Origin: Macrostomum hystrix
Taxonomy: Eukaryota > Animalia > Platyhelminthes
Length of the DNA stretch: 64,000 nt
NCBI GenBank assembly: GCA_950097015.1
Contig: CATNEN010000039.1
Coordinates: 12,524,001-12,588,000, forward strand
Direction of reading: 5' to 3'
Shown: one piece after another, positions 10,790 to 56,419 of the stretch
Position numbering within the stretch: position 1 is the stretch's first letter
Layout of the letters: every line of letters starts with the position of its first letter
Made by a program: the position numbers and the translations under genes
Notes under the pieces: generated by a model
Databases searched by the model: none
What the model saw: only the letters and a program-made list of their open reading frames with translations
Told to the model about the DNA's origin: nothing

Positions 10790-13700
10790 ATGGCCGAAAG
10801 TCGATTGCCTTCGAAGCCGGCCGCGGACGAATTCGACGCTGCCGACTCGGCCGATCTGGACGATCAGAATCGCAGCGAGGACGAAGACGCTGATGAAGAT
10901 GACGATCACGACGATGACGGCGAAGATCACGAAGAGGATCTGCCGATGAGTGAGGATGTGCGCCAATTGCGGCGAGACAACGGCGCCAACGACCATTTTA
11001 CTCTACTAGGACCAGACGCTGTCCACGAGGAGATGCACCGCATTGTGCAGGTCACGTGACCTTGTAACTGTACCTCTGCCACCACAATACTCATTGTTCT
11101 CAAACCTGACTAATTAGCAATTACCTCCCCGCCCTAACAGGAGGTTTGCCAGATTGTTCAGCTGCCCAGTAGAGTCCTGCGCCTTCTGCTCAGCACCTAC
11201 CGCTGGGACAAAGACCTGCTACTCGAACGATTCTACGAGCGCGAGCCTGAGGACTTCTTGGCCAAGCACCACATACCGGCCAGTCAGTGGCGCACTGGCG
11301 CTTCTGGCGACGGCAGCTCTAGCGGCGGTCAGGTGAGAAGTAGATTCTTAGACCAACTTTGGCGGACAGGTGAGAAGTATATTCTTAGACCAACTTTGGC
11401 GGTCAGGTGAGAAGTAGATTCTTAGACCAACTTTGGCGGTCAGGTGAGAAGTATATTCTTAGACCAACTTTGGTGGACAGGTGAGAAGTAGATTCTTAGA
11501 CCAACTTTGGCGGACAGGTGAGAAGTAGATTCTTAGACCAACTTTGGCGGACAGGTGAGAAGTATATTCTTAGACCAACTTTGGTGGACAGGTGAGAAGT
11601 AGATTCTTAGACCAACTTTGGCGGTCAGGTGAGAAGTATATTCTTAGACCAACTTTGGCGGTCAGGTGAGAAGTAGATTCTTAGACCAACTTTGGCGGTC
11701 AGGTGAGAAGTAGATTCTTAGACCAACTTTGGCGGACAGGTGAGAAGTAGATTCTTAGACCAACTTTGGCGGATAGTTGAGAAGTAGATTCTCACCATAG
11801 ACTGTTGAGAAGTATATTCTCACCATTCTCATGATTCTCACCAGGTGAGATCTAGATTCCTATCGTAGACAGGTGCAAAGTAGATTCTTAGTCTCGTATA
11901 CATAGACACGTGAGATTCTTAGACTTAACTTTGTTAGACAGGTGAGTAGTATAGTCTTACCATAGACAAGGGAGAAGTAGATGTTCATCATAGCCAGTTT
12001 AAAAAGGCTTAAAATGTCGAACTCACACTGACATCGTTAACTATCCAGACGTCGATGCTGTGCGAAATCTGCTGCCAAAGCCGGCCATGCGGTGGCATGC
12101 TGGGCAGCGGCTGCGGTCACGTGTTCTGCGTGGACTGCTACAGATCCTACGTCAGCCAGCGAATGATTCAAGCTGGCCAGTTTGAGGGCCTTCAGTGCCC
12201 GGCCTTCGAGTGTCGCGCTCTCCTAGACGACCAGCTGGTCCTTCGGCTGCTGTCAGGCTCAGCCAAGCTGCGGGCCCAGTTCCAGAAGGCTCTCGTCACC
12301 AACTTTGTCACCTGCAATCGCCGACTGGCCTTCTGTCCGGGCGCCGACTGCGAGTGCGTCGTCCGGCTGCTGGACGACGCCGGCTTGCGGGCCTGCCGAG
12401 TCACCTGCCACTGCGGCAAGACCTTCTGCTTCGCATGCGCTCAGGTTGGGAGGGGGGCTGAAGTTTTTCTGTGTTTGCGTCTCGGATTGTCTAGGGCCAG
12501 GTGTGCAGCCGACAGCACAGCCGCAGCTATTGCTCCATGGACTGAAGGGGCAACCACCCTCAATTTCCCCAGCTGGTGCTGATGCCCATTTATTAACAGC
12601 TGAGTGAGCTGAAGCAATGCATAGTTTAGTGTCTTGCTAAATGACACAAATTGTCCCAATAGAGTCGGGAATCGAACCTAAGACCTTCAAGTCGTGAGTC
12701 CGACGCTATAAACACTAGGCAAAACCCACCTTGCTTGAATCTCAGCCTAAGCCCTAAGCGAAACAAATTGAGTCCTTGATAGAAGCAACTCTAATTCCCT
12801 CCGAATGCTTTAGTTTATCTAGCTGGGAAATGGATTACATTGCTACTACCTGTCCGCGGACTGAAAAGCTGTACACAACCTTAAGAAGCATCGCATAATG
12901 GCTGTGGTATTGCCGCTGGCTGTACATGTGGCTCGATTGTGCTAGGTGCCAATTTTTTGTCAGTCTTATTTAATTTCAGTATCAATCGCATCATTATGTC
13001 CATCAATCTATATATCTTGATCTTAATATTATCTCTCACAATGCCTATCTTCTCTAAATCTAAATCAAATTTCGTTAATATCAATCTCATGCTTATCAAT
13101 CTCAATCTCATGATTATCAATCTCAATCTCATGCTTATCTATTTCAATCTCATGCTTATCTATTTCAATCACATGCTTATCAATCTCAATCTCATGTTTA
13201 TCTATCTTAATCTCATGATTATCAATAAAAGTCTGATGTTTATCTATCTCAATCTCATGATTATCAATCTCAATCTCATGCTTATCAATTTCAATCACAT
13301 GTTTATCTATTTCAATCTCATGCTTATCAGTTTAAATCTCATGTCCATCAATCTCAATCTCAATCTCAGTATTCCTATCATCATGCTGCCTAATGAATCA
13401 ACATTCGCCCAACCCCGTCACCAACCGCGGCAGGACTGGCACGAGCCAATCACCTGTGACATGCTGCGTCGCTGGCAGCAGAAGAACGCTGGCGAGTCCA
13501 TGAGCACCCAGTGGTTCATGGCCAACACTAAGGAGTGCCCAAAGTGTCACGCCACTATTGAGAAGAATGGCGGCTGCAATCACATGAAATGTCGCAACGC
13601 CACCTGCAATCACGAATTCTGCTGGGTCTGCATGGACGACTGGCAGCCGCACGGCAAGGAATGGTACAACTGTAATCGGTGAGTGACATTTGGAGCATGC

Positions 13701-18898: not shown

Positions 18899-19803
18899 AT
18901 ATTTTTATTGTTAAGTCTGTCAAACTGTTCATAGTCAGTAACCTAACGATTGCCCATAGCCTACAATGAGTGTCTAAGCGAAAAATGTTTGCCAACTCAT
19001 ATTTTTATTGTTAAGTCTGTCAAACTGTTCATAGTCAGTAACCTAACGATTGCCCTTAGCCTACAATGAGTGTCTAAGCGAAAAATGTTTGCCAACTCAT
19101 ATTTTTATTGTTAAGTCTGTCAAACTGTTCATAGTCAGTAACCTAACGATTGCCCTTAGCCTACAATGAGTGTCTAAGCGAAAAATGTTTGCCAACTCAT
19201 ATTTTTATTGTTAAGTCTGTCAAACTGTTCATAGTCAGTAACCTAACGATTGCCCTTAGCCTACAATGAGTGTCTAAGCGAAAAATGTTTGCCAACTCAT
19301 ATTTTTATTGTTAAGTCTGTCAAACTGTTCATAGTCAGTAACCTAACGATTGCCCTTAGCCTACAATGAGTGTCTAAGCGAAAAATGTTTGCCAACTCAT
19401 ATTTTTATTGTTAAGTCTGTCAAACTCTTCATAGTCAGTAACCTAACGATTGCCCTTAGCCTACAATGAGTGTCTAAGCGAAAAATGTTTGCCAACTCAT
19501 ATTTTTATTGTTAAGTCTGTCAAACTCTTCATAGTCAGTAACCTAACGATTGCCCTTAGCCTACAATGAGTGTCTAAGCGAAAAATGTTTGCCAACTCAT
19601 ATTTTTATTGTTAAGTCTGTCAAACTGTTCATAGTCAGTAACCTAACGATTGCCCATAGCCTACAATGAGTGTCTAAGCGAAAAATGTTTGCCAACTCAT
19701 ATTTTTATTGTTAAGTCTGTCAAACTGTTCATAGTCAGTAACCTAACGATTGCCCATAGCCTACAATGAGTGTCTAAGCGAAAAATGTTTGCCAACTCAT
19801 ATT
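18899..19803 (+). repeat. 100-bp tandem repeat, 9 near-identical copies
   Basis: Unit starts ATATTTTTATTGTTAAGTCTGTCAAAC; period exactly 100; two variable sites seen. Confidence 0.97.
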
Positions 19804-20198
19804 TGAATATTTTCTGCTTCTGCTTTTGGAAGCTGGAATGGGTAGGCCGCCTCCAGCTGTATCGTAAGTTGAATAATTAAACCCATAGATTGTGTAACCC
19901 AAGGCCTCTAAGGAGAATGTAGAAAGGAATGTCCTTGCAGTCTCAAGACTTGCTTGTCTTATAAATTTGCTGTTCAGCTGGCCTAGGCTACACAGTGTGG
20001 ATTAGTAAACTGATAGGCCGGATGCAGAATACTTATGCATACTCCATCCTAATCATTTTCCCGGCTTTTTCAGTATTATGAAGGTCAGAAAATTTGTGTT
20101 TCTTGAGGCTCAAAATATTTTTAGCAGCTAGTGATGGACATAGCAAAATACATTGCAAAATGAACTTCATCTTATCCCGGTTGGCAGGCATAGACCTT

Positions 20199-21830
20199 TA
20201 ATCCCTTGATAAACTCTTCTTAAATCCCTTAATAAACTCTCCTTAAATCCCTTGATAAACTCTCCTTAAATCCCTTGATAAACTCTCCTGAAATCCCTTG
20301 GTAAACTCTCCTTAAATCCCTTGATAAACTCTCCTTAAATCCCTTGATAAACTCTCCTGAAATCCCTTGGTAAACTCTCCTTAAATCCCTTGACAAACTC
20401 TCCTGAAATCCCTTGATAAACTCTCCTTAAATCCCTTGATAAACTCTCCTGAAATCCCTTGATAAACTCTCCTTAAATCCCTTGATAAACTCTCCTTAAA
20501 TCCCTTGATAAACTCTCCTTAAATCCCTTGATAAACTCTCCTTAAATCCCTTGATAAACTCTTCTTAAATCCCTTGATAAACTCTCCTTAAATCCCTTGA
20601 TAAACTCTCCTTAAATCCCTTGATAAACTCTTCTTAAATCCCTTGATAAACTCTCCTTAAATCCCTTGATAAACTCTCCTTTAATCCCTTGATAAACTCT
20701 TCTTAAATCCCTTGATAAACTCTCCTTAAATCCCTTGATAAACTCTCCTGAAATCCCTTGGTAAACTCTCCTTAAATCCCTTGATAAACTCTCCTTAAAT
20801 CCCTTGATAAACTCTCCTGAAATCCCTTGGTAAACTCTCCTTAAATCCCTTGATAAACTCTCCTGAAATCCCTTGATAAACTCTCCTTAAATCCCTTGAT
20901 AAACTCTCCTTAAATCCCTTGATAAACTCTCCTTAAATCCCTGGATAAACTCTTCTTAAATCCCTTGATAAACTCTTCTTAAATCCCTTAATAAACTCTC
21001 CTTAAATCCCTTGGTAAACTCTCCTGAAATCCCTTGGTAAACTCTCCTTAAATCCCTTGATAAACTCTCCTGAAATCCCTTGGTAAACTCTCCTTAAATC
21101 CCTTGATAAACTCTCCTGAAATCCCTTGATAAACTCTCCTTAAATCCCTTGATAAACTCTTCTTAAATCCCTTGATAAACTCTTCTTAAATCCCTTGATA
21201 AACTCTTCTTAAATCCCTTGATAAACTCTTCTTAAATCCCTTGATAAACTTTCCTTAAATCCCTTGATAAACTCTCCTTAAATCCCTTGATAAACTCTCC
21301 TTAAATCCCTTGATAAACTCTCCTGAAATCCCTTGATAAACTCTCCTTAAATCCCTTGATAAACTCTCCTTAAATCCCTTGATAAACTCTCCTTAAATCC
21401 CTTGATAAACTCTTCTTAAATCCCTTGATAAACTCTTCTTAAATCCCTTGATAAACTCTCCTTTAATCCCTTGATAAACTCTTCTTAAATCCCTTGGTAA
21501 ACTCTTCTTAAATCCCTTGATAAACTCTTCTTAAATCCCTTGATAAACTCTCCTTAAAACCCTTGATAAACTTTCCTTAAATCCCTTGATAAACGCTCCT
21601 TAAATCCCTTGATAAACTCTCCTTAAATCCCTTGATAAACTCTCCTTAAATCCCTTGATAAACTCTCCTTAAATCCCTTGATAAACTCTCCTTAAATCCC
21701 TTGATAAACTCTCCTTAAATCCCTTGATAAACTCTCCTTAAATCCTTTGATAAACTCTCCTTAAATCCCTTGATAAACTCTCCTTAAATCCCTTGATAAA
21801 CTCTCCTGAAATCCCTTGATAAACTTTCCT
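20199..21830 (+). repeat. 23-bp minisatellite (~70 copies)
   Basis: Unit AAATCCCTTGATAAACTCTCCTT. Confidence 0.97.
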
Positions 21831-22879: not shown

Positions 22880-23200
22880 TCACCCACCTCAAACCGCCTT
22901 AAGCGCCCACCTCACTCCAAACCGCCTTAAACGCTCACCTCACTCCACACCGCCTTAAACGCTCACCTCACTCCACACCGCCTTAAAGGCCCACCTCACT
23001 CCACACCGCCTTAAACGCCCATCTCACTCCACACCGCCTTAAACGCCCACCTCACTCCACACCGCCTTAAACGCCCACCTCACTCCACATCGCCTTAAAC
23101 CCCCATCTCACTCCACACTGCCTCAAACCCTCATTTTACTCCACACTGCTTTAAACGCCCACCTCACTCCACACCGCCTTACCCCCATCTCACTCCACAC
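22880..23200 (+). repeat. 28-bp minisatellite
   Basis: Unit CCGCCTTAAACGCCCACCTCACTCCACA. Confidence 0.9.
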
Positions 23201-23849
23201 CGGATTTTAAACCCGTACCCGGTTCTTCGAAGAATACTGTGCCACTCACTGTTCATTAGGCCCAACTTGACTTCATGTAGTGTCTGCATATTATTTAACT
23301 AGATTTTTGTCAGGAAGTTTAATGTTTTATTAAGAACATAGCATTTTGGCTAAAGAGGATGAGGAAGAAACTCGGGACAAAACTCATAGGGTTTCTATGG
23401 CACTCGTAAGTAGCGGCCATCCCATTGCTCGGATCCCAACTTTAAATTATAGAGTTCTGCAGTCAGTCTGCTGGCGTAGCTCGAATTGCGTGCCTTCTTG
23501 TCTGCCTCCACCTGTCCGCCCCCCTCGGGCCATTAAGTCTGACTTCGAGACGGGGGAATTCGGCTCAAAGTGGAACTCTTTCCAACGGAACTCGACTTAG
23601 TTGGATGCTTTTGGGATTTATCTTAGGGTAGGGGGTAGGAGCGGTCAAGTGAACGCTGCTTCAGTCCCATAAGTCACCTGCCTTATTAGGAGAGACTTGA
23701 AGGATTTGGAAAACTTGAGAGTTTAGCTTTAAATCGATTTAGTAAAAAGGTCTTCCTCTGGCGTGAAGGCTAAAGGCAAAATTTGTTTTTTTAATTGACT
23801 AAAACTATTTCAATTGTGAGTTTTTTGTATCACTCTCCTCCTGTTCCCC

Positions 23850-24710
23850 AGTGTACAGCTGTCAATCACTTCCTGCCCTCAAGTGCACAGCTGTCAATCA
23901 CTTCCTGCCCTCCAGTGCACAGCTGTCAATCACTTCCTGCCCTCAAGTGCACAGATGTCAATCACTTCCTGCCCTCCAGTGCACAGCTGTCAATCACTTC
24001 CTGTCCTCCAGTGCACAGCTGTCAATCACTTCCTGCCCTCAAGTGCACAGCTGTCAATCACTTCCTGCCCTCAAGTGCACAGATGTCAATCACTTCCTGC
24101 CCTCCAGTGCACAGATGTCAATCACTTCCTGCCCTCAAGTGCACAGATGTCAATCACTTCCTGCCCTCCAGTGCACAGCTGTCAATCACTTCCTGCCCTC
24201 AAGTGCACAGCTGTCAATCACTTCCTGCCCTCCAGTGCACAGCTGTCAATCACTTCCTGCCCTCAAGTGCACAGATGTCAATCACTTCCTGCCCTCCAGT
24301 GCACAGATGTCAATCACTTCCTGCCCTCCAGTGCACAGCTGTCAATCACTTCCTGTCCTCCAGTGCGCAGCTGTCAATCACTTCCTGCCCTCAAGTGCAC
24401 AGCTGTCAATCACTTCCTGCCCTCCAGTGCACAGCTGTCAATCACTTCCTGCCCTCAAGTACACAGCTGTCAATCACTTCCTGCCCTCCAGTGCACAGCT
24501 GTCAATCACTTCCTGCCCTCAAGTGCACAGCTGTCAATCACTTCCTGCCCTCCAGTGTACAGCTGTCAATCACTTCCTGCCCTCCAGTACACAGCTGTCA
24601 ATCACTTCCTGCCCTCTAGTGCACAGCTGTCAATCACTTCCTGCCCTCCAGTGCGCAGCTGTCAATCACTTCCTGCCCTCCTGCGTACAGCTGTCAATCA
24701 CTTCCTGTCA
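23850..24710 (+). repeat. 32-bp minisatellite (~27 copies)
   Basis: Unit CAGTGCACAGCTGTCAATCACTTCCTGCCCTC. Confidence 0.97.
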
Positions 24711-25159: not shown

Positions 25160-25735
25160 GAAGTAGGGAGCAGAAATGACGGAGGAGGGAGCGGAAATGA
25201 TGAAGAATAGAGCGGAAATGACGGAGGAGGAAGCGGAAATGACAGAGTAGGGAGCGGAAATGACACAGGGGGGAGCGGAAATGACAGGAGGGAGCGGAAA
25301 TGACAGAGTAGGGAGCGGAAATGACGGAGGGAGCGGAAATGACAGGAGGGAGCGGAAATGACAGGAGGGAGCGGAAATGACAGAGTAGGGAGCGGAAATG
25401 ATGGAGGAGGAAGCGGAAATGACGGAGGGAGCGGAAATGACAGAGGAGGGAGCAGAAATGACAGGATGGAGCGGAAATGACAGGAGGGAGCGGAAGTGAC
25501 GGAGGGAGCGGAAATGACAGAGTAGGGAGCAGAAATGACAGGATGGAGCGGAAATGACAGGAGGGAGCGGAAGTGACGGAGGGAGCGGAAATGACCGAGT
25601 AGGGAGCGGAAATGACAGAGTAGGGAGCGGAAATGACAGAGGAGGGAGCAGAAATGACAGGAGGGAGCGGAAATGACAGAGGTGGGAGCGGAAATGACAG
25701 AGGTGGGAGCGGATATGTTGGAAAAGGGAGCGGAA
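25160..25735 (+). repeat. 18-22-bp purine-rich minisatellite
   Basis: Unit GGGAGCGGAAATGACAG(GA/AGTA/AGGA). Confidence 0.93.
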
Positions 25736-26390
25736 AGAGAAATGAGGTTGAAATACCAAGAAAAGTTATTCTGTATATTAGCTCCGGCATAGGAATGAAG
25801 TTGAAGTCAGAATGAAGTCAGCAGTGGGTGCGTGACCCACACTCTAGAGCCAACGACCCGCAAGGGGATGAAATTAGTAGGGCTCCGGGATCCCTGTTCG
25901 GTAGTTTTATGCACTCTAACGCGGCATTGACGTCTCGACGACTTCCAAATGAGCGCCAAATAGAGAAGACCTAAAACGGTCGGTGCTGAGGACGGAGCTA
26001 TGAGGTTCCGATTGACACGGAGGCCCAGCGAGGCCCTCCCAAATCAATAATTGATTAGGGAGCCTGGCAGATTGGCTACTTCACCTGACTGCGGCTTTCT
26101 CCAGCCAGCTAGAAAACTCCTCGCCTCGGCTTGCTCATTCAGCATCTCGTTTGACGGCGCGGGAGTGCCCGAACAGCCGGCCAACCAGGAATCTCCCAGC
26201 TAGGCGGTGGGTAAGATATTCCACAGCACCGGGCTAAGAGGCAGAGAAAGAGAGAGAGAACGGCCCTCCCCCCCCCAAACAGCTGCAAAACCTTCTCAGC
26301 ACGGCTGGCGGAGACCTAAGAACCAGAATCAGACAGCTTGTAATCAGACAAATCCCCTGAGGATTGAAGCCATTGCGCTGAGCCATCCAG

Positions 26391-27388
26391 ATGCAGAAGC
26401 TTCCAGCAAGTCGCAGCCTGCTGACTGTCGCCCTGCTGCTGAGCGTCGCGACTCCGTCGTATTTGAGCGTCTCGGCTGCCGTAGCCGACAGTCAAGGAGG
26501 CGGCGGCGGTCTGCGCACCGCAGCGGCCCCTAACTACACCAACATTGTGGACCGCATTGTTGAGAATATCTTCCAAGGCTACAACAAGCATCAGCGACCC
26601 GTGCCAGCCCGGCGCTCCAGACCCGACGGCCGGATCGAGGAGGACTCCACCGTGGTCTTCGTCAACATGAAGATCCTCAGCATCAACAAGGTGGACGTCA
26701 TCAATATGGAGTTCACGCTGGACATGTACCTGAGGCAGTACTGGAAGGACCACAGGCTCATGTGGAGCAACAACCAGTTCCGCTTCTACAACGAGTCAAT
26801 CGCAATCCCGGCCAAGAAGGAGAACCTCTGGCTTCCAGATCTGTTCTTCCGCAACGGCAAGGAGGGCTACTTGCACAAGATGACGCAGCCCAACTATCTC
26901 ATCCGGGTGGACCCGGACGGCAGCATCCTGTACTCGCAGAAGGTGACCATGAAGTTCTCCTGCCAGATGCAGCTGCAGACTTTCCCCATGGACACCCAGA
27001 CATGCTTCATCAACATCGGCAGCTACGGCTACACCACCAAGAACCTCGAGTTCCGCTGGCTGCAGGGAGAGAAGGACCCTGTTGAGCTGGACTCCAGCAT
27101 GCAGATCTCCGAGTTCAACACGCCGAAGGGAGTCAAAGTGATCGACTGCACCAGCGGCAGCGCCACCAGCACCGGCAGCTACGCCTGCCTGAAGGCCGTC
27201 TTCAAGCTGGAACGGCAGCTGGGGAGCTACCTGTCCGGCACCTACATCCCCGCCATCCTCATCATCGCCGTCAGCTGGCTGAACTTCTGGATCAACGTGG
27301 AGGCGGTGCCGGCCCGAGTGTCGCTAGGTCTGCTGACTCTGCTGGGCATCCTCACCCAGGGCATGTCAGTGATCAACAACCTGCCCAG
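26391..27388 (+). CDS. Cys-loop ligand-gated chloride channel (GluCl-like), first exon A: signal peptide, ECD, M1, M2
   Basis: LWLPDLFF, Cys-loop CQMQLQTFPMDTQTC, second disulfide C..C, anion-selective PAR motif; ends CCC AG|GTGAGG (phase 2). Confidence 0.9.
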
Positions 27389-27434
27389 GTGAGGCAGCGG
27401 AGCATGTTTCCGGGTTTATTTTCAGCCCGCAGCC

Positions 27435-27635
27435 GATTTGTGTCCTATAGCAAGACATTTAACTATGCATTGCTTCAGTTCAACCCTGTTAGATGGGTAC
27501 CAGCATTAGCTAGGATAATTGAGGGTGGATGTGGCATCACCCCAGTCCATGGACTGAACAGCCGTTCGCAGCCTTCAGATGCGCTGCGCAATAGCTGCGG
27601 CTGTGCTGTCGGCTGCACATCTGGCTCGCTTAGGG
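27435..27635 (+). mobile_element. SINE family A, 5'-truncated
   Basis: TGTGTCCTATAGCAAGACATTTAAC..TTGCTTCAGTTCA..ATGGGTACCAGC CORE-like segment. Confidence 0.7.
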
Positions 27636-27693
27636 CAGGTTTAATCAATACAGAATCGAATGATAACCAGAATAGCTACATATTCATTTAAGT

Positions 27694-28367
27694 CAGGGGT
27701 CGGCAAACTCCGGCCCGCGGGCCAGATGCGGCCCTCGAAGCTCTCAAATCCGGCCCGTTGCCCCTTCTGACATCTACAGCGTCCTGTTTCCTCTCTCTCG
27801 TGTCTAATCTCTCCCGTGTCTCATCGCTCTCGTGTCTAATCTCTCCCGTGTCTAATCTCTCTCGTGTCTAATCTCTCCCGTGTCTCATCGCTCTCGTGTC
27901 TAATCTCTCCCGTGTCTAATCTCTCTCGTGTCTAATCTCTCCCGTGTCTAATCTCTCCCGTGTCTAATCTCTCCCGTGTCTAATCTCTCCCGTGTCTAAT
28001 CTCTCCCGTGTCCAATCTCTCCCGTGTCTCATCTCTCCCGTGTCTCATCTCTCCTGTGTCTCATCTCTCCCGTGTCCAATCTCTCCCGTGTCTAATCTCT
28101 CCCGTGTCTCATCTCTCCCGTGTCTCATCTCTCCCGTGTCTCATCTCTCCCGTGTCTCATCTCTCTCGTGTATCATCTTTCTGTGTCTCATCTCTCCCGT
28201 GTCTCATCTCTCCCGTGTCTTATCTCTCCCGTGTCTCATCTCTCCCGTGTCTCATCTCTCCCGTGTCTCATCTCTCCCCTATCTCATATTTATACAGTCA
28301 ATGCGGCCCGCTGTCGTCTTTTAGGTTCTCTCTTTGGCCCGCCAGCAAATAAGTTTGCCTACCCCTA
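27694..28367. mobile_element. hAT-type MITE with an internal 16-bp minisatellite
   Basis: TIRs CAGGGGTCGGCAAACT / AGTTTGCCTACCCCTA (14/16 match); 8-bp TSD ATTTAAGT at 27686-27693 and 28368-28375; internal unit CGTGTCTMATCTCTCC. Confidence 0.85.
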
Positions 28368-28859
28368 ATTTAAGTCTTTCGGTTTGAGTTGCTCCTAAGG
28401 ATATACTCCAACCGCTCTGAACCTGTATACGCTATACACTATGTAGTTATACGCTAAAAATAGCTAACTGCAATGTGACAAATTCGACACCGCGTCCTGT
28501 TTACTTGAGACTCGCCTTGGCAACATCTGGCCTGTCCACTTTCTTATTTGAGCACAATCCGACTGCTCAAACTACTCAATGCCTAGTTTCTCACTTTAGG
28601 CAGCTCGCGTGTACACTGCATTGTTAGCGGTGAAATCCCACCGTAGTTACTACGACTATAATGCTTTGGAAATCTAAAGTTGGGTTCCAGTGGCCCACTT
28701 TAGATTTGCTAATTACCAATAGCCCGATGAGGCAATTCATCTTCTCATGGTTAGCTATGACACTAAATTTAAGAAATTACTTTGCTCTGCAGCTTTAAGT
28801 ACATGTGTACTTTAACAATCAGGATTTTTGTGCCACTGACGCTGGAGTCCCTGATTAAT

Positions 28860-29075
28860 AATCATTCGGTGACACTAGACCCGCAGCCAGCGAGGTGGCA
28901 ATTCTGACCATTCCCCTGACTCCTGAGCACACACTCACACAGATACTGTACGCGGACACACGCTGACACAGGTGTGTACATCTGCCCTGACTTTCTCATC
29001 GTCAGGCAGTGTACACTCTCACTGTGCCTTGGAGGTTGGCCCACAAATGTGTTAACCACTCTGCCACTGACCCTC
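28860..29075 (-). mobile_element. SINE-like family B, internally deleted copy
   Basis: Reverse complement of 42035-42390 (A-box TGGCAGAGTGG; CCAACCTCCAAGGCACAGTG). Confidence 0.7.
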
Positions 29076-29855
29076 TCTCGAGTCCCAGACGGTCCTTGGT
29101 TCGCATCGGCGGCGAGACCACATAACTCAAACTCAATGCATATCAGTACATAGCAACCGATATAATGTGATGCAATGTTATCCCACATTTTTGGCACTGA
29201 CCCCTATAGCCGATCTATCTTGAGTTAGCTATTCCCATTTGGCGCCCAGAGTAGATAATTGAAATCTTGCTACGTCTCGTCCTCACGCCCTGTTAGCCAA
29301 ACCAAGCATAAGCTCGCCACTCATGCTGCAGCCTGTGCTGTTGTCGGGTAAATTGAAAAATAAATTTGTAAGAAATTTCGCGCTAAAATTGTTGCAGCGG
29401 TGTGAAACGGTGTGGCATAGCTCCCCCCCCTCTAGCAACGGGTTTGAGTGAGTGGGGTGGGGGTTCTGGGTTTGCAGCCGGCTAGAAGAGAGGCCTCTTC
29501 AACTGAGACCGAGAATTTCTCGTCATCCAGTTTGCCTGAAGTATGGGTCAGTAATGTTAATGACAATAATAATCGTAGTCGGAATAGTTATACTCTAGAA
29601 AAATATACAGCAACTTCAGTCGTTAGTCAAGTGGTATCGACGGGCAGAATATGCTTCTTGAGAATTTTCCTAGGCATAATTTCTACTGAAGAAAACATTT
29701 GCCTTCTTAATGGGAATATTGGAATGCTTATTTTAGTGCAATATTAAGAAAAGCGTGTAAATTGGTTTCGTTTTCTTGAAATTCTCAAAGTTGACTTAAC
29801 TCCATGTGCTTAGACTTGACTTTCTGCCAAATTTGGTCACAAACTCACAGACTCT

Positions 29856-30270
29856 CAAACTCTGTGGGTCACAAACTCTGTGGGTCACAAACTCTGTGGG
29901 TCACAAACTCTGTGGGTCACAAACTCTGTGGGTCACAAACTCTGTGGGTCACAAACTCTGTGGGTCACAAACTCTGTGGGTCACAAACTCTGTGGGTCAC
30001 AAACTCTGTGGGTCACAAACTCTGTGGGTCACAAACTCTGTGGGTCACAAACTCTGTGGATCACAAACTCTGTGGGTCACAAACTCTGTGGGTCACAAAC
30101 TCTGTGGGTCACAAACTCTGTGGATCACAAACTCTGTGGGTCACAAACTCTGTGGGTCACAAACTCTGTGGGTCACAAACTCTTTGGGTCACAAACTCTG
30201 TGGGTCACAAACTCTGTGGATCACAAACTCTGTGGGTCACAAACTCTGTGGGTCACAAACTCTGTGGGTC
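29856..30270 (+). repeat. 16-bp minisatellite (~26 copies)
   Basis: Unit CAAACTCTGTGGGTCA. Confidence 0.97.
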
Positions 30271-30725
30271 GTACAGTTTGTGGACAATACTAAACTTTAT
30301 GAGTGAAATATGCTTTTGATAAGACTGTAGTTCTTATAGTACGAGCAGCTAGTCGTTGAAGAACAATTTTATATCGGTAAAACTCTACTGACAGTAGTAG
30401 TAGGTTTAGAAGCACGAAGTCACAACCATAAAAAATCCCAAATTTTCTTGAAAAGAAGGAAAACTCCGGGGTTCGAGTCTCAGCCCAATTGAAACGATTT
30501 GTTCCCTAGAACTATAAATTTGATTCGCCTGAGCTTCACTTCATTCAGCTGTTAAATGAGTAACGGACTGAAAAAAGTTCACGATGCCATTTAGAAGAGC
30601 AAAGCAAATAGCTGCTACTGTGTCAATACTGGGCCAGGTCTAACTTCTACCTCTTACGAGTCTGTCCTTCCTGATTGGCTAGCTTGAGCCGATAGGAATA
30701 AAAGTACTTTGCTCATCGCTCTGAG

Positions 30726-31717
30726 ATGCCACGGACGCCAAGGACGAGGAACATGAGAACATACTCAGCGATCCGCAAGCTGCTGTGCTACTGGGTTCTC
30801 AGCGTCGACATTATCAGCCTCGCGCAAGCCAAGCTGCTGCGATCATCTCCGCCTGGCAACCACACTAGCATTGTGGACCGCATTGTTGAGAATATATTCC
30901 AGGGCTACAATAAGTATCAGAGGCCAGCATCCCATTGTGACAGTCCTGGTGGAATCGAGCCGTGCAACCAATCCCCCACCGTGGTCTTCGTCAACATGAA
31001 GATCCTCAGCATCAACAAGGTGGACGTCATCAACATGGAGTTCACGCTGGACATGTACCTGAGGCAGTACTGGAAGGACCGCAGGCTCATGTGGAGCAAC
31101 AACCAGTTCCGCTTCTACAACGAGTCAATCGCCATCCCGGCCAAGAAGGAGAACCTCTGGCTTCCAGATCTGTTCTTCCGCAACGGCAAGGAAGGCTACT
31201 TGCACAAGATGACGCAGCCCAACTATCTCATCCGGGTGGACCCGGACGGCAGCATCCTGTACTCGCAGAAGGTGACCATGAAGTTCTCCTGCCAGATGCA
31301 GCTGCAGACTTTCCCCATGGACACCCAGACATGCTTCATCAACATCGGCAGCTACGGCTACACCACCAAGAACCTCGAGTTCCGCTGGCTGCAGGGAGAG
31401 AAGGACCCTGTTGAGCTGGACTCCAGCATGCAGATCTCCGAGTTCAACACGCCGAAGGGAGTCAAAGTGATCGACTGCACCAGCGGCAGCGCCACCAGCA
31501 CCGGCAGCTACGCCTGCCTGAAGGTTGTCTTCAAACTGGAACGGCAGCTGGGCAGCTACCTGTCCGGCACCTACATCCCCGCCATCCTCATCGTCACCGT
31601 CAGCTGGCTGAACTTCTGGATCAACGTGGAGGCGGTGCCGGCCCGAGTCACCCTTGGGCTGCTGACTCTGCTGGGCATCCTCACCCAGGCGTCTGCTGCG
31701 ATAGCCAGCCTGCCAAG
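30726..31717 (+). CDS. GluCl-like channel, first exon B: signal peptide, ECD, M1, M2
   Basis: Near-identical ECD to exon A, different N-terminus and M2 end; ends CCA AG|GTTGTT (phase 2, weak donor). Confidence 0.88.
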
Positions 31718-31817
31718 GTTGTTGCCTAGCAACAGGGGAAAAATTCCCTCTCTGAGTGGTTTTATATCCCACTCCGCTTCGCGGACATCAGCGGCTGCAT
31801 TGACCATGTTCACGTGG

Positions 31818-32000
31818 AGGCTGTAGCCTAGTGCTTAGAATCACGACTTAAAGGTCGGGGGTTCATTTCCCTACTTTAGCAAGAGTGCGCATTGCTTCAG
31901 TTCACCCAGCTGTTAAATGGGTACCAGAATCAGCTGGGGTAATTGAAGTATGTGTAGCGTGTCCTCAGTCATCAGCTCTTTCTACCTATATCTGCAGCGT
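31818..32000 (+). mobile_element. SINE family A, internally deleted
   Basis: TGTAGCCTAGTG head; TTGCTTCAGTTCACCCAGCTGTTAAATGGGTACC. Confidence 0.65.
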
Positions 32001-32433
32001 CTCATTAATTTACCTAGTTAGTTAGTCAGATGGCAATTCATACCAAATAAATGTTGGATAATTGAGTTAGCACAACCTCACATCACGCACGCAATAACCT
32101 CAATCTCAACGCACACATTCGTGAGCAGTTCATCGGATGATTAATCACTAGATATCCTCTTAAGCCAAGGACCATTGTCCGTGGGACTCTAGTGCACTCT
32201 AGTGCATACGAGTGTATACTATTAGCACAGTAGAATGACCCACGCTATTGTCCCTGCCCGAAGACCACAGGGGTATTAGAAACCCCGTCTTTCAACTGTG
32301 ATTATCAGCAGTACTCGCGTACATATTACTTTTGGTCCTGAGCTCTTGATCATTTATCGGTAGATAGATCGCGTTAATCCCATCGTCAAAACAAGCACGC
32401 ATCGCCCATTGTACACCCCTCGCCACCACGCAG

Positions 32434-32890
32434 AGTGGCCTACATCAAGGCCATAGACATCTGGATCATCGCCAGCATAATGTTCGTCATCGGGGCCCTC
32501 ATTGAGTTCGCCGTCGCCTCTTTCCGCGCCCGCCGCACCAAGATGGAGAGCTGGCAGCGCGAGATTCGCAGCGTCGTCCGCTCCGAGCTGCAGCGTCTGG
32601 CCGTTATTCGCGGCGGCGGCCTCCCGCCGGGGCTGCCCTGCGCCGGCGGCGGCGGCGGCAACCTTCACGGCTACCCTGGCTTCCCCGAGGAGCTGGAGGA
32701 TCTTCTGGCTGCCAGCGTTGAGGACGGAGCCGGAAACAACAAGGGCCCGCCGCCGGCTCCGGTGCCATCGCCAGACTCCGACATCGACACCTACAGCCGG
32801 TTCGTGTTTCCCGCCTGCTTCCTGCTCTACAACTGCTTCTACTGGCTCTATTATCTAGTGCTGGTGGTCAAGATTGACCCCAGCCAATAA
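32434..32890 (+). CDS. GluCl-like channel terminal exon: M3, intracellular loop, M4
   Basis: Acceptor CACGCAG|A GTG GCC gives LPR-VAYIKAIDIW; IDTYSRFVFPACFLLYNCFYWLYY is M4. Confidence 0.92.
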
Positions 32891-33013
32891 TTGCTGATGC
32901 GGGCGCGGTGTCGACAGGTGCAGCTGTGCCCTAACTGGATGGCCTGCCGTGCCTGGAGATTAATAGAAAACCCACGAAAGATTTATTATACCTGACCACT
33001 TATTAACAAGACT

Positions 33014-33160
33014 GCAGACAGTTGACGTGCAGACAGTTGACCCACAGACAGTTGATTCATAGACAGTTGACCCATAGACAGTTGACCCACAGACAGATGA
33101 CCCACAGACAGTTGATCTACAGACAGTTGACCCACAGACAGTTGACCCATAGACAGTTGA
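33014..33160 (+). repeat. 15-bp minisatellite downstream of the channel stop
   Basis: Unit CAGACAGTTGACCCA. Confidence 0.9.
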
Positions 33161-34422: not shown

Positions 34423-37280
34423 TCAAACATTCAGCTCCAGCAGGCAGGCAGTCAGCGTCACCACAAACTGCAGGCGTCTCCCGGCATCCTCCGTCAGTGT
34501 CTCCACGGTCGACCTCACCAGCTCGGCAAAGTTCGCCGAAGCCAGCTCTCGAATACAAGCGAGTCGTGACTCATCATCGCTTCTCAGTTCTCCAGCAGCA
34601 ATTCGGAAAGCAAATTTCAGCATCGAATTGAGTAGCTTTTTAAGCAGACCGTGTTGGGGTTGAAGAAGCAGGTCAGACTCCAGCTCCCGGACGCACAGCT
34701 CAGCCCAACTGGCAGCGTCATCCGGAGAACAGGGAGTAGCAGCGAGGCTGGAGCTCAGCTCAGAACTCTCGTCAGCTTCGGTAGGAGTCCTTTCGATCAC
34801 CTTCAGCATGGGGTAGGGCGACTTCTCCAGCGGGAAGTACACGAACATTTCTAGGCGCTTGCCTGGATCATAGTCGCTAATAGGTGCGTAGGTGAAGCCA
34901 CGAAGGCTTTTCGTCGCAGGATGGGCGTCAGTGAACAGCAGATGAACGGGAGCTTCTTGTCCAGATTCTACTATGATGTGGTCCCAGGTATTCAGGCACT
35001 GGAGATCGGTGATAACCTCTTGCTCATCTGCGGGCTGGTTGGAGGCGTTGTTGGAGCTGGCAGACAGTAGAGCGGCGAGCTCCACGAGACCGGGTCGTGT
35101 CAGGCCCCGCAGCCAGGTGCAGAAGTCTCTGTGTGAAATTCCGTAGCCAAGGTGCCGATCTGATGCGTTGACGAGAGAGGCGCCAAGCAAAATGGCGGTC
35201 GTGTCGCTCAGAACTTGCGCCGTCGAGCCGACTGGCTCCTGGAGGATGCGGCACACCCGCCTGATGCAATTTTTCGAACTTTCGTAAGAGACTGTCAGCA
35301 TTTGCACGGTCTTCGGCTGCCAAGTAACTGCTGTGAGGCTCAGGTGGGCCATGTCGACACACTCGTCACAGGGACATATCTTTAGGAGGCGTGCAGTTTG
35401 AAGGCTCGGCTCAGCAGATTGTGGGACGTCCTGCTGTAGGTTCAGGTGTCCCTGACCCAGAACTGGCAAAGTGACCAGCAAGCTGATACCGGTCACTGGT
35501 CCAAAATGTCTAGGAGAATTCGACTTGTGATTAACGCAGCACCAGCGAACAAGGTCACGCGAGCTGCTCCATGCGGCTGAGTATCCGGCAGTCCCTAGTC
35601 GAGCTCTGGCTCTCTGCAGGACTTGCTCTCTAGTACTCAGCTTCTCTGCGTCAGCTTGGAAACGGAGCGTACTAAATACGTGACCCGATGCTGAGACACG
35701 CAGTGTATCAACGCTCATTGCGTCCCCTGCGAAGCAAATTACCTCCAATGACGACTCGTCAGTCGATTTATTCAGCTTGTTGACGATAGCATGGAGTCCT
35801 GGCACTGTGGCTTCAAACGGATGCGTATCAGTTTTCTGACGGATGCAAACGGCGTCGCCTGGTTGTAGATCGGCAAAATCACCAACCGTGTGCTCTTCAA
35901 ACATCGGAACGTCGCTCTTCCATTGCCTGAGAATCGGGCACTGCAAATCAGGCTCGCTGTGCCGGATCAAATGGACTTGCTGATGCTTCTCCGTGTCCAG
36001 CACAACGTGCACTTCACTTGTAGCCTGAGCTGGATTCAGAATCAACGGTCCATACTGCAGAGTCTCAACTCTAAATGAACGATCTTGCTGAGATTTCCGA
36101 CGTACAGACAGAACTATTTGAGCTCGTCCCTGCCTAGAAATCAGGTAACCGGGAAGCAACTGAGCAGCTTCGATACCAGCTTCCCGGTGATCCCTTGGCT
36201 CGGCGCAGACTCCGGTGGCAAGAAAGGCGATCGCCTGCAGGTCGCTGCACTCCCAGGACAGGCAGGCACCAGACAACTTTTCAACTCCCTGGCGGACTTC
36301 CGCCATCTGGAACGGCACGTGCAGTCGCACAAGTGGATCATCATCGTCAGGCCCGATGCTGAACGAGCTTCTCGTAAACGCGCAAAGATTCGCAACCGCT
36401 GACGTTTCAGCAACTATCGACAGGACAAGCCAACGATTTTCGACGTCTAATGATTTTGCTTCGCTAACAACAGCATGAAATTTGCGGTTGCAGAAGGACA
36501 TCCAGGCATGATCAGCCGGTCGGATTTTGTGCAGCTGCAGCGGAACGTGGCAGTCGTCTTTGTTCCTCTGACAGTCGCGCACTCGACACCACACAGCCAG
36601 GCTGTGGGCATTGTTACTAGTGGGATGATGTTGCGTCTCGCCGAAGCGACTCTTAGCTCTGGCCAGCGACTCATTGGCAGAGTAGAGCACGGAATTAGGA
36701 AAGGTGTGCAGCCAAGCCTTGGAGCTGGTGCAATCAATGATGAAGTCCTCGCGCAGCACAGTCACAGGGTCGAGCAGCCTCAGCCTGCCGTAGTGGATCG
36801 CTCGCACGGCCAGCTGGTTGTCGGCAGCTGAGTACCGGCAGCTCTCTACGACCAGCTTGTGCGGCAGCGTGTAGTAGGACACGTTTAGAACGTCACCTGT
36901 ATTAGTAGTGTATACGAGCGTAAGTTAGCTAAGTGTGAAAGAATTATACATTTTTCGAAAAAAAAGTTTGGTATCATTCAGTATAACAGCAAATACAACT
37001 ACTAAAAATTGTGATTCTCACCAGCACTGATCCTCTTTGCCACCTCAGTTGTAATAACTTCGTGATTTTCACTTGGCACCTGCGTGGCTGCCAGACGAAT
37101 GCTCAACTGCCACCGCGGCTCCTCTAGCACAGCCCTCAGCCAGGGACTGCCAACAATGGCTCGCCTGAGCAGCCAGAACTGTTGCTCTCGGGTCATCCTG
37201 GTGCGCCTTTCCTGTTCGTCCAAGATGCGCTGAAGCTGCAGAGCCAGCTGCTGAAGCTGCGGGTCCGCCTGGTCTGCCAT
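34423..37280 (-). CDS. ~910-aa protein with tandem degenerate LRAT/PLAAT (NlpC/P60-like) domains; exons 37280-37022 and 36896-34423
   Basis: Phase-1 GT-AG intron joins the 92-aa and 819-aa ORFs. Motifs AGDVL..PH..AIHYG..SLARAKSRFGE..NNAHSLAVWC and LQPGDAV..LHAIV..QVLQRARARLG..Y..SSRDLVRWC. Confidence 0.7.
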
Positions 37281-54905: not shown

Positions 54906-56419
54906 CTCACATACATGTATGCATATGTACCAATGAACAGACAGTTGACAAATTTACTAGCTTACAAATTTACAATAGTTGATTGCAGTTGATAAACAAA
55001 AAGTTGACAAGTCTACTAGCATAGGCCTAATTAAAGAAATTAAGTTAGCCTTACATAAGCCTTACATTAGCCTTACATTAGCCTTACATACATTATATAT
55101 GCATGATTCTTAACCAAATTATTAACTTTAATTCTATCAGGTACTCTTAAACTACCTGGAGTTTACACTTTCCATGCAATTTTCATGTTTTTCATGGATT
55201 TATCAATACTATATTGATGATATAATCAACTCTTGTAAATTTACAATTCTTTGAGCATATGTGTATCCATTTTAATCAGGGACTAATTAATTTCTCCATT
55301 TCATTAGATTTTTCACTTCTTACTACTGCAAAAAATAGTCAGCTTTAAAGATATTAAAAATAGTCAATATATATAAGACCACATTGCAAATATTTCTAGA
55401 GAATCAAAAGCAAAAATGTTGGGTAGCTTTAGTTTTAGTACCCTTTTTAAATAGGCATGTTGTGTATTTAACAATCTAGATCTGACCTCCTATATAAGTT
55501 TTGAGTGACAATCATTGTAGTGCAGATTTCTTATTCAAATGATAGTCTTCTGAAACTACACTTCCCCTCTAATATCTTATTAAAAATAGGCCCTTGTTTA
55601 TTATTTCAGTTTTGGTAGTTTCTCAATGATCCTATTCTGAAACTATAGTATTTCATGTCTTATTTAGCATAGGGCCTAACAAAAGTTGTTTGGCATAAAT
55701 AATACAAAAATAACTATGGGTTACAAAGTTGTACCCTCTCAGTTTTGTAAGATAATCATTTTCAATGGTATGGGTAAATTCAAATATTTAACCAAAAGTG
55801 CAGTACTATACTTTTGGCTTCAAGTAAGCCATAGAGATTGTTTGCTGAAAGTTTAGAAAAAAAATATTTTGATTATAGTTCAGTATCACAATCATTTCTC
55901 TTAAAAAGTTGCATTGAAATGGTCACCTTCCAAAACCAAGAATAAGGCTTCTTGAGCTTTAATCCTATAAATTACTGGGTTTTTCAATTAGTAATAGTAG
56001 TAGTAGTAAGTAGGATGGCTCATTTTAGTAGCAGCCTATTTTTTCAATTATATTTTTTGGATGAATTAAGAATGCAAGTGTTTAAAAGTATAATTTATTA
56101 GGGCAGTTTTAAATTAGTACAAAACAGAAAAACAAAAGTAATAATGAGCATTTAATCAATACAAATAGTTTTTTTTAGTTAAAAAAGGTAAATGTAATTG
56201 TTCTCTGTATGCACAAAGATTGGAAATTAGGGAAAAGCTACAAAGAAAAAGTCTAAGCAATGAAGCCATAAACAAAGAGAAAAAAGTCTGCTGATTACAA
56301 GTTGCTGAAGTCAAAAGTAAGTAGTTTGTACTTTTAGTACTTGCAAACAAACAAACAATGAAAAATGTATGATTCACAGACCTAAATTCATAACTATTTT
56401 TTATTACACCTGCCTCAAT

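What the first reader, a model, noticed from the sequence alone, without database searches (positions are those of the whole stretch)
26391..32890. Chloride-channel locus with two variable first exons and one shared constant exon
Seen: exon A (26391-27388) and exon B (30726-31717) each carry their own ATG, signal peptide, whole ligand-binding domain, M1 and M2. Both end at the same codon (LP-AG|GT, phase 2). The only M3-M4 exon in the window is 32434-32890; 27389-30725 shows only repeats and non-coding sequence. Either donor spliced to the 32433 acceptor gives the canonical LPRVAYIKAIDIW. Known: variable-first-exon/constant-exon layouts occur in clustered protocadherins and UGT1; Cys-loop ECDs are normally split over many exons. 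Inference: promoter choice yields two subunits with the same ligand site and cytoplasmic loop but different pore helices, possibly co-assembling. I do not know of this layout in a Cys-loop receptor.
Basis: partly seen in the sequence, partly recalled or inferred. Interest (0 to 1): 0.88.

Follow-up and report, generated by a model that had tools for sequence, protein, structure and literature searches.

The report
Chloride channel gene, two alternative front halves
A Macrostomum flatworm gene for a glutamate-type chloride channel has two complete alternative first exons (ligand-binding domain plus the first two membrane helices) and one shared last exon; the same layout is kept at four loci and RNA contigs show the far exon spliced to the shared one, so one locus very probably makes two subunits that differ mainly in the pore helix.

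Summary
Exon A (26391-27388) and exon B (30726-31717) each carry an ATG, a hydrophobic N-terminus, the whole ligand-binding domain, M1 and M2. Both end at the same ..LP-AG|GT phase-2 donor. The only M3-M4 exon is 32434-32890.

New evidence:
- **Same layout elsewhere.** Three more loci of this genome have it, with no relic M3-M4 exon between A and B. Macrostomum lignano has orthologues of both exon types.
- **Split evolutionary history.** The ligand-binding part is homogenised within each locus; here 549 nt are 99.3% identical. M1-M2 instead groups by type across loci. The M2 tail is GMSVINNLP in all four A exons and AS..LP in all four B exons, with 2' Ser against Thr, under strong purifying selection.
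- **RNA.** Transcript-like contigs from two runs of one study carry exon A's own letters joined to the constant exon (27388>32434). Exon B and its 5'UTR are transcribed, but the B>C joint was not recovered; assembled contigs cannot show absence.

The family is the Schistosoma-like GluCl clade. The layout mirrors nematode unc-49 and avr-14. Promoter choice and co-assembly remain inferred.

The scan had already noted this layout on two other pieces of this genome, probably two of the paralogous loci.

The parts
26391..27388 (+). Variable first exon A: ATG, hydrophobic N-terminus, ligand-binding domain, M1 and M2 (A type). Donor AG|GTGAGG at 27388/27389, phase 2.
   Evidence: A-type letters are seen in contigs of all four runs. 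It is joined to 32434 in runs X2 and X3.
27309..27388 (+). M2 of exon A, from PAR to LP-AG: 2' Ser and a 15'-21' tail of GMSVINN. The tail is identical in the A exons of all four loci and in M. lignano P0001 and P0002.
27389..32433 (+). 5,045-nt intron removed from A transcripts. It contains exon B, which has no upstream acceptor in use.
   Evidence: Joint; lengths
26647..27195 (+). Gene-conversion tract, A copy. It is 99.3% identical to 30976-31524 and covers the ligand-binding core from beta1 to just before M1.
   Evidence: ECD dS between A and B is 0.038.
30513..30519 (+). TATAAAT, a candidate core promoter for exon B, 48 nt upstream of the first transcribed base seen. This is inferred only.
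30567..30725 (+). Transcribed 5'UTR of exon B. The contig is collinear with the genome, with no leader letters, and there is no depth upstream of it.
   Evidence: X1 record 1, X2 record 9
30726..31717 (+). Variable first exon B: ATG, hydrophobic N-terminus, ligand-binding domain, M1 and M2 (B type). Donor AG|GTTGTT at 31717/31718, phase 2.
   Evidence: B-specific exact contigs lie at 30567-30814, 30631-30818, 30771-30959 and 31369-31689.
31638..31717 (+). M2 of exon B: 2' Thr and a 15'-21' tail of ASAAIAS. The B-type tail is AS(T/A)(V/A)(M/I)(A/G)(N/S) across the four loci.
31718..32433 (+). 716-nt intron expected for B transcripts. It carries a dispersed, highly transcribed repeat at about 31822-31970.
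   Evidence: This joint was not observed.
32434..32890 (+). Constant exon: last base of the Arg codon, M3, cytoplasmic loop, M4 and stop at 32888-32890. The 3'UTR runs past 33000.

Best explanation
This is one transcription unit of a Schistosoma-like glutamate-gated chloride channel (GluCl) gene with two mutually exclusive first exons and one shared last exon.

**How it works.**
- A transcript that starts upstream of exon A uses the donor at 27388. Exon B has no acceptor in front of it, so the donor joins the only acceptor available, at 32434, and B is removed inside a 5,045-nt intron. This step is shown by RNA contigs.
- A transcript that starts about 160 nt or more upstream of exon B, inside that intron, uses the donor at 31717 and the same acceptor. 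B's transcription is shown; the joint and the separate promoter are inferred.

**The products.** They are two subunits of 484 and 482 residues with identical M3, cytoplasmic loop and M4, and a nearly identical ligand-binding core. They differ in five places:
- the signal peptide;
- the N-terminal loop;
- parts of M1;
- the pore-lining 2' residue (Ser in A, Thr in B);
- the top of M2 and the M2-M3 linker (15'-21').

The layout is old and selected. It is kept at four paralogous loci and in M. lignano. Gene conversion homogenises the ligand-binding part within a locus, while selection keeps the two M2 types apart.

The likely purpose is two channel types, or a heteromer, with the same agonist site but different conductance, gating, desensitisation or blocker sensitivity. 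This is inferred by analogy with UNC-49B/C.
For: **Anatomy.**

**Four loci with two first exons and one constant exon.** C39 is this window; the others are on contigs C41, C7 and C11. All eight first exons have their own ATG and hydrophobic N-terminus, are intact, and end at the same phase-2 AG|GT donor. No relic M3-M4 exon lies in any A-B gap.

**Selection.**
- M2, same type across loci: dN 0-0.02 for A and 0.02-0.12 for B, at dS 0.5-1.4.
- ECD, A against B within a locus: dS 0.038, 0.086 and 0.175 in three loci, against 0.5-2 between loci.
- M2, A against B within a locus: dS 0.45-0.57.

**AU tests.**
- ECD: the by-locus tree wins by 283 lnL; p for the by-type tree is 2e-9.
- M1-M2: the by-type tree wins by 31 lnL; p for the by-locus tree is 0.027.

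**RNA.**
- The four runs hold 44-50 Mb of contigs each, against a 220-Mb genome. Most intron bins are empty and spliced joints are present, so I take them to be RNA.
- Contigs in X2 and X3 carry 11 of 11 A-specific letters, then A's unique tail (27361-27385), then 23-26 nt of the constant exon.
- A-type tails of C41 and C11 are joined to a constant-exon start matching 32432 onward. The 20-23 nt on that side do not tell the four constant exons apart.
- A contig in X1 and X3 matches the C7 constant exon at 13 of 14 variant letters and is best explained by C7_A joined to it.
- B-specific exact contigs, including the 5'UTR, are present in X1, X2 and X4.

**M. lignano.** P0001 is 93.9% identical to C41_A and P0002 is 93.9% identical to C11_A. 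P0031 carries the B-type N-terminal insertion.

**Family.** The best named hits are flatworm GluCls, including SmGluCl-2 at 56%. GluCl alpha 3RHW aligns over M2.
Against: The 31717>32434 joint was not listed in any of the four runs. A and B share an exact 31-nt run just before their tails (31659-31689), and they share the constant exon after them. The two tails therefore form a bubble in a k=31 assembly, of which only one arm may survive. I take the absence as uninformative, but B>C at this locus remains unproven.

B's donor (GTTGTT) is weaker than A's (GTGAGG). B was not detected in run X3.

All RNA evidence comes from one study, as assembled contigs of a library with no recorded type.

The promoter for B rests on one TATA-like heptamer that is not conserved at the other loci, and on where a low-depth contig starts. 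No 5' end of A was examined.

Function, ligand and co-assembly are untested.
Confidence: 0.8

Rival explanations
1. Only exon A is productive. Exon B is transcribed but is not spliced to the constant exon, so it is a decaying or regulatory duplicate inside A's intron.
For: No 31717>32434 joint appears in four runs. B's donor GTTGTT is weak. B's contigs are at lower depth than A's, and B is absent in X3. B's ECD is overwritten by A-like sequence.
Against: B-type exons are intact at all four loci, with the donor at the same codon. Their M2 is under strong purifying selection: dN/dS is 0.03-0.12 between loci at dS 0.7-1.4. The B-type M2 tail and N-terminal insertion are kept distinct despite gene conversion next to them. 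M. lignano keeps a B-type exon, P0031. Contigs cannot show absence, and here a bubble is expected.
Confidence: 0.07
2. The two mRNAs are the same as in the main explanation, but the switch is not promoter choice. A single promoter upstream of A makes one pre-mRNA, and B is selected by processing, for example spliced-leader trans-splicing to an acceptor upstream of B's ATG.
For: From my own knowledge, not checked here: Macrostomum mRNAs are often SL trans-spliced. An earlier first-reader note on this genome mentions acceptors just upstream of ATGs (s1-845284). A ttcattcag acceptor-like site lies at 30540-30548. No promoter motif is conserved upstream of the B exons.
Against: B's 5'UTR contig (30567-30814) lies on the genome over its whole length with no foreign letters, and the base pair before it is GG, not AG. 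Depth is zero in all four runs from 30300 to about 30566, so there is no sign of a precursor running through. TATAAAT lies 48 nt upstream of the contig start.
Confidence: 0.1
3. The layout is an assembly artefact or a very recent partial duplication with no biological meaning, and A is a dead copy.
For: There is a 549-nt near-identical tract between A and B, and tandem repeats lie in the gap.
Against: The same order and number of exons occur at four diverged loci. The A-type M2 tail is identical in protein at dS 0.5-1.1 between loci. The A>C junction is present in RNA contigs. The window has no N.
Confidence: 0.02

Closest known systems
C. elegans unc-49 GABA receptor locus (Bamber et al. 1999, as summarised in PMC8841521)
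   Same: One Cys-loop locus encodes several subunits by joining a shared part to one of several tandem alternative parts. Two of its products, UNC-49B and UNC-49C, co-assemble into a heteromer with changed pharmacology.
   Different: The layout is the mirror image. unc-49 has a common N-terminus and three alternative C-terminal copies, chosen by splicing from one promoter. Here the alternatives are complete first exons (start codon, signal peptide, ECD, M1, M2) and the shared part is M3, the loop and M4. The receptor clade and the phylum are also different.
Nematode avr-14 (gbr-2) GluCl alpha3A/3B
   Same: A GluCl gene makes two subunits from one locus, with different channel domains behind the same ligand-binding domain.
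   Different: In avr-14 the N-terminal part is literally shared and the C-terminal channel and intracellular parts alternate. Here the ligand-binding cores are two separate DNA copies kept alike by gene conversion, and M3-M4 is literally shared.
Schistosoma mansoni SmGluCl-2 and SmGluCl-3 (Dufour et al. 2013, PMC3757052)
   Same: Same receptor clade: 56-57% identity, the PAR motif, the loop A Arg and two Cys loops. The ECD is not split by introns. These subunits form homomeric glutamate-gated chloride channels.
   Different: [quoted passage not shown] The Macrostomum genes have an intron in the Arg 24' codon after M2, and a duplicated first exon.
Variable-first-exon, constant-exon loci (clustered protocadherins, UGT1A). 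This comparison rests on my own knowledge and was not checked in papers here.
   Same: Tandem first exons each carry a start codon and most of the functional ectodomain, and each is spliced to shared downstream exon(s), skipping the intervening variable exons.
   Different: There are only two variable exons here, and a separate promoter for each is not shown. The protein family is unrelated. Here the variable exons also carry two membrane helices, including the pore lining.

Membership tests
Cys-loop (pentameric) ligand-gated ion channel | Neur_chan_LBD plus the Neur_chan_memb domains | tested here: met
   PF02931 has E 4e-48 and 3e-47 in A and B. PF02932 positions 1-49 match in A and B, and positions 52-110 match in the constant exon.
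Cys-loop (pentameric) ligand-gated ion channel | Signature Cys loop, C-x13-C | tested here: met
   CQMQLQTFPMDTQTC is present in both exons and in all eight paralogous exons, with two substitutions among them.
Cys-loop (pentameric) ligand-gated ion channel | Four membrane helices, M1-M4, in one polypeptide | tested here: met
   This is met only through splicing. M1-M2 lie in the variable exon and M3-M4 in 32434-32890. The A>C joint is seen in RNA contigs, and the frame across the joint matches homologues. For B the joint was not observed.
Anion-selective subgroup (GlyR, GABA-A, GluCl) | Pro-Ala-Arg at M2 positions -2' to 0' | tested here: met
   VPARV is present in A and B and aligns with PARV of GluCl alpha 3RHW.
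Schistosoma-like (S-like) flatworm GluCl clade (Lynagh et al. 2015) | Loop A arginine that takes the glutamate alpha-carboxyl | tested here: met
   LWLPDLFFRNGK is present in all eight exons, the same as in SmGluCl-2 P0018. The criterion comes from PMC4338433.
Schistosoma-like (S-like) flatworm GluCl clade (Lynagh et al. 2015) | Closest relatives are verified or annotated flatworm GluCls | tested here: met
   The top 80 or more hits are platyhelminth proteins at 48-78% identity, including SmGluCl-2 isoform 2.
Schistosoma-like (S-like) flatworm GluCl clade (Lynagh et al. 2015) | Gated by L-glutamate and conducts chloride | not testable with these tools
   This needs oocyte or HEK electrophysiology.
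Variable-first-exon, constant-exon locus | Two or more tandem first exons, each with its own start codon, and one set of constant exons | tested here: met
Variable-first-exon, constant-exon locus | Each variable exon is spliced directly to the constant exon | tested here: inconclusive
   A>C was seen in X2 and X3. B>C was not recovered from the assembled contigs.
Variable-first-exon, constant-exon locus | Each variable exon has its own promoter | tested here: inconclusive
   For B: the 5'UTR contig starts at 30567, there is no depth upstream, and TATAAAT lies at 30513. The motif is not conserved at the other loci. The 5' end of A was not examined.
unc-49 / avr-14 type locus | Shared N-terminal exon(s) with alternative C-terminal channel domains | tested here: not met
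   The polarity is opposite: the N-terminal halves alternate and the C-terminal part is shared. It works like these loci but is not of their type.

The most novel reading that the evidence does not exclude
The locus is a built-in heteromer generator. A and B subunits are co-expressed in the same cells and co-assemble. Gene conversion keeps every agonist site in the pentamer the same, and selection keeps two different pore and gating modules: 2' Ser against Thr, and the 15'-21' segment with the M2-M3 linker. The modules set conductance, desensitisation or blocker sensitivity by stoichiometry. This division of labour would have been preserved at four loci since before the Macrostomum species split.
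Probability: 0.3. Interest if true: 0.75.

Novelty: new variant of a known kind. Interest (0 to 1): 0.6.

Why it matters
Making several Cys-loop subunits from one locus is known from nematodes, but only with a shared ligand-binding half and alternative channel halves. Here the polarity is reversed, and the alternative halves are whole first exons. In seven full-text searches I found no description of such a layout for this receptor superfamily.

The evolutionary pattern amounts to a natural domain-swap experiment. The ligand-binding core is repeatedly overwritten by gene conversion, while the M2 helix and the M2-M3 linker resist it at four loci. That points to exactly which residues matter for the difference between the two subunits: 2' and 15'-21'.

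It also has a practical side. Two M. lignano protein predictions (P0001, P0002) run through the A donor into the intron, and a third (P0031) is truncated within the ECD. Annotation pipelines can therefore miss the far constant exon. These GluCls belong to the clade studied as anthelmintic targets in schistosomes, and M. lignano, a congener, is a transgenic free-living model in which exon-specific tests are feasible.

Tried and rejected
- **Read laying over both donors and the acceptor (26950-32940).** As the tool advised, I laid the part beside it (30300-33000) at 90% likeness, so that A-derived contigs would lie on B and betray themselves by their letters. A's 5' end and A's own stretch were never laid.
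- **The look-up of encoding contigs was closed.** Conservation of the layout in M. lignano rests on the proteins only.
- **Joined models.** I did not build or search a joined A+constant or B+constant protein or mRNA. The reading frame across the joint was checked from the bases at the two exon ends and from homologues.
- **Relic M3-M4 exon after A.** A sensitive tblastn and blastn search of all four loci found only chance matches, the best at E about 0.2 and on the wrong strand.
- **Conserved promoter motifs.** Alignment of 400 nt upstream of the four A and four B exons found none.
- **Full-length Macrostomum proteins.** The 90%-clustered protein collection held none that would show A+C or B+C.
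- **Literature searches.** 'alternative first exon' with 'Cys-loop', and SmGluCl-2 with 'splice', returned nothing.

Full report
**1. What is in the sequence**

Exon A (26391-27388) and exon B (30726-31717) translate without stops into 332 and 330 residues. Each starts with Met and a hydrophobic N-terminal segment. I ran no signal-peptide predictor.

Each exon matches the whole ligand-binding domain PF02931 and the first 49 positions (M1-M2) of PF02932. The stretch 32435-32887 matches PF02932 positions 52-110, with M4 at its end.

Both exons end ..CTG CCN AG|GT. The acceptor is ..cacgcag|A at 32433/32434. AG + A gives Arg, followed by VAYIKAIDIW. Full-length flatworm relatives read LPRVSYIKA(L/I)DIW at that place.

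The coding lengths are 998+457 and 992+457 nt, giving 484 and 482 residues. The introns are 5,045 and 716 nt.

tblastn at E<=10 finds no second M3-M4 exon in the 64-kb window. The A-B gap holds two 16-nt tandem arrays and a dispersed repeat.

**2. Organism and family**

The best protein hits are Macrostomum lignano (78%) and then parasitic flatworm proteins at 48-60%, among them SmGluCl-2 isoform 2. M. lignano P0001 and P0002 are 93.9% identical to paralogous exons of this genome. The window therefore comes from a Macrostomum species close to, but not, M. lignano. The assembly is 220 Mb in 42 contigs, and the window is C39:12524001-12588000.

The exons carry these family marks:
- the C-x13-C Cys loop;
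- a second Cys pair in loop C;
- PAR at -2' to 0';
- the loop A arginine (FFRNGK), which Lynagh et al. give as the mark of the Schistosoma-like GluCl clade (PMC4338433; alignment).

SmGluCl-2.1 and SmGluCl-3 form homomeric glutamate-gated chloride channels, and their genes are single exons (PMC3757052). An unsplit ligand-binding domain is therefore normal in this clade. What is special here is the intron after M2 and the doubled first exon.

**3. The layout is repeated four times**

I searched the whole genome with the constant exon and with exon B. The same arrangement turned up on contigs C41, C7 and C11. At each of these loci:
- there are exactly two ECD-M2 exons in tandem, followed by exactly one M3-M4 exon, all on one strand;
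- all first exons are intact, with their own ATG and hydrophobic N-terminus, and end at the same phase-2 AG|GT;
- the constant exon starts with (A/G)GTGGCCTACATCAAGGCC after ..(c/a)(g/a)cag;
- no relic M3-M4 exon lies in the A-B gap.

The introns removed from the upstream exons are 5.0, 7.9, 16.1 and 21.8 kb.

The upstream exon always has the M2 tail GILTQGMSVINNLP and 2' Ser. The downstream exon always has GILTQAS..(N/S)LP and 2' Thr, and in three of the four loci a clearly longer N-terminal loop.

M. lignano P0001 and P0002 are A-type. P0031 has the B-type N-terminal insertion. The A/B split is therefore older than the four loci and older than the species split.

More distant paralogues in this genome have an intron six codons further on, or none at all. 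The intron in the Arg 24' codon thus goes with this subfamily.

**4. Mosaic evolution**

| Comparison (Nei-Gojobori) | Value |
|---|---|
| ECD, A against B within a locus, dS | 0.038 (here), 0.086, 0.175, 1.71 |
| ECD, between loci, dS | 0.5-2 |
| M2, same type across loci, dN | 0-0.02 (A), 0.02-0.12 (B) |
| M2, same type across loci, dS | 0.5-1.4 |
| M2, A against B within a locus, dS | 0.45-0.57 |

In the ECD, same-type and cross-type distances between loci are alike.

In this window, 26647-27195 and 30976-31524 differ at 4 of 549 positions, with 331 identical in a row. The following 193 nt (M1-M2) differ at 20 positions.

AU tests agree with the distances:
- For the ECD, the by-locus tree beats the by-type tree by 283 lnL (p = 2e-9 for by-type).
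- For M1-M2, the by-type tree wins by 31 lnL (p = 0.027 for by-locus).

Gene conversion therefore keeps the two ligand-binding cores of a locus alike. It stops, or is selected against, before the pore helix. Both M2 types are under purifying selection. A dead duplicate would not behave like this.

By alignment with GluCl alpha 3RHW, the type-specific residues are 2' and 15'-21'. From my own knowledge of the family, not tested here:
- 2' lines the narrow intracellular end of the pore and contributes to the picrotoxin site.
- 15' is the alcohol and ivermectin position.
- 19'-24' is the M2-M3 linker, which couples binding to gating.

**5. RNA**

Each has 44-50 Mb of contigs against a 220-Mb genome, most intron bins are empty, and the contigs contain spliced joints. 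I therefore take them to be transcriptomes.

I laid them on 30300-33000 at 90% likeness. The results:
- **A>C at this locus.** Contigs in X2 (6.3x) and X3 (10.6x) run along 31495-31689 with exactly the 11 letters by which A differs from B there. They then carry 25 letters found only at 27361-27385, then 23-26 nt of the constant exon. This is the 27388>32434 junction. The final CAG of exon A equals the last three intron bases, which is why the aligner reports 32431.
- **A in all four runs.** The ECD contigs carry A's letters at three or four of the four sites where A and B differ.
- **A>C at the paralogues.** The unique A tails of C41 (X2, X4) and C11 (X4) are joined to a constant-exon start matching 32432 onward. 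The 20-23 nt on that side do not tell the four constant exons apart. A contig in X1 and X3 matches the C7 constant exon at 13 of 14 variant letters, and its upstream piece is nearest C7_A. The C7 assignment is an inference.
- **B is transcribed.** Exact, B-specific contigs cover 30567-30814 (X1), 30631-30818 (X2), 30771-30959 (X4) and 31369-31689 (X4). B is thus transcribed from at least 159 nt upstream of its ATG, with zero depth further upstream.
- **B>C was not recovered.** No 31717>32434 joint is listed in any run. A and B share an exact 31-nt run (31659-31689) just before their tails, and they share the constant exon after them. In a k=31 graph the tails form a bubble of which one arm may be dropped, and the B contig in X4 ends exactly at 31689. 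The absence says little, but B>C is not shown here.

**6. Mechanism**

- Shown: the gene structure, its conservation, A>C splicing and B transcription.
- Inferred: B>C splicing. This rests on B's conserved donor, on selection on B's M2, and on the lack of any other M3-M4 exon.
- Weakly inferred: a separate promoter for B. The evidence is TATAAAT at 30513, a contig start at 30567 that is preceded by GG rather than AG, and no leader letters. The motif is not conserved at the other loci.
- Still open: a single promoter with trans-splicing (about 0.1).
- By analogy only: co-assembly of A and B, as in UNC-49B/C.

**7. Comparison with what is known, and novelty**

unc-49 joins a common N-terminus to one of three tandem C-termini. 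avr-14 variants share the N-terminal part and differ in the channel and intracellular parts (PMC8841521). Both work like this locus, giving several subunits from one gene, but with the opposite polarity. This locus therefore fails their defining feature.

In form it resembles protocadherin and UGT1A loci, which have variable first exons and constant exons. That comparison rests on my own knowledge.

In seven full-text searches I found no description of alternative whole first exons in a Cys-loop receptor. I rate it a new variant of a known kind.

**8. Earlier notes of this scan**

A look-up shows that the scan had already flagged the same layout on two other pieces of this genome. By their lengths these are probably the C41 and C11 loci.
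- One follow-up reports RNA fragments joining each of the two first exons to the shared exon.
- The other did not read the joint.

I treat these as leads only. My own data confirm only the A-type joints of those loci.

**9. Limits**

- All RNA evidence is assembled contigs from one study.

Noticed in passing
window 31822-31970; also 27436-27648, 2738-2908 (-), 12496-12651 (-), 56400-56591 (-), 63866-64000: A short dispersed repeat, SINE-like and not classified, sits just downstream of both donors. It is very abundant in the RNA contigs, with summed depth 2,300-3,400 against 5-40 on the exons, and dozens of contigs run out of it into unrelated sequence.
   Followed up: partly
window 31306>32435 (joint): All four runs hold a contig at depth 8-10 with 22 letters ending at 31306, in the conserved Cys-loop codons, and a piece starting at 32435. 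The letters between are not known. It is probably a paralogue's first-exon-to-constant contig, possibly C7_B, which has the exact 22-mer. It could not be resolved.
   Followed up: partly
L021 (C38:32801401-32805285), L022 (C3:12747848-12751675), L023, L024: More distant GluCl paralogues of the same genome do not share the intron in the Arg 24' codon. Two run on to ..RVSY(V/I)K before a GT, and two read straight through M3 like the single-exon schistosome genes. Only one ECD-M2 match was listed near each in the genome search; a second first exon was not searched for specifically.
   Followed up: partly
proteins P0001, P0002, P0031 (M. lignano): The public M. lignano predictions of the A-type exons read through the donor into intron sequence after ..NNLPR and lack M3-M4. 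The B-type prediction is truncated. The far constant exon was evidently missed by annotation.
   Followed up: partly
window 19000-19804, 20195-21830, 22893-23202, 23848-24707, 25165-25736, 27792-28287, 29856-30270, 33015-33160: There is an unusually dense series of tandem arrays around the gene: 100 nt x8, 23 nt x71, 28 nt x11, 32 nt x27, 21 nt x29, 16 nt x31, 16 nt x26 and 15 nt x10. The region 16-22 kb has strongly negative GC skew.
   Followed up: no
window 34423-36882 (-): An 819-codon open frame lies on the opposite strand, 1.5 kb downstream of the constant exon. It has no Pfam match at E<=0.001.
   Followed up: partly
window 32158-32388: Run X2 alone holds a low-depth (3.4x) exact contig inside the B-to-constant intron. 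It may be unspliced precursor or a trace of genomic DNA in that library.
   Followed up: no
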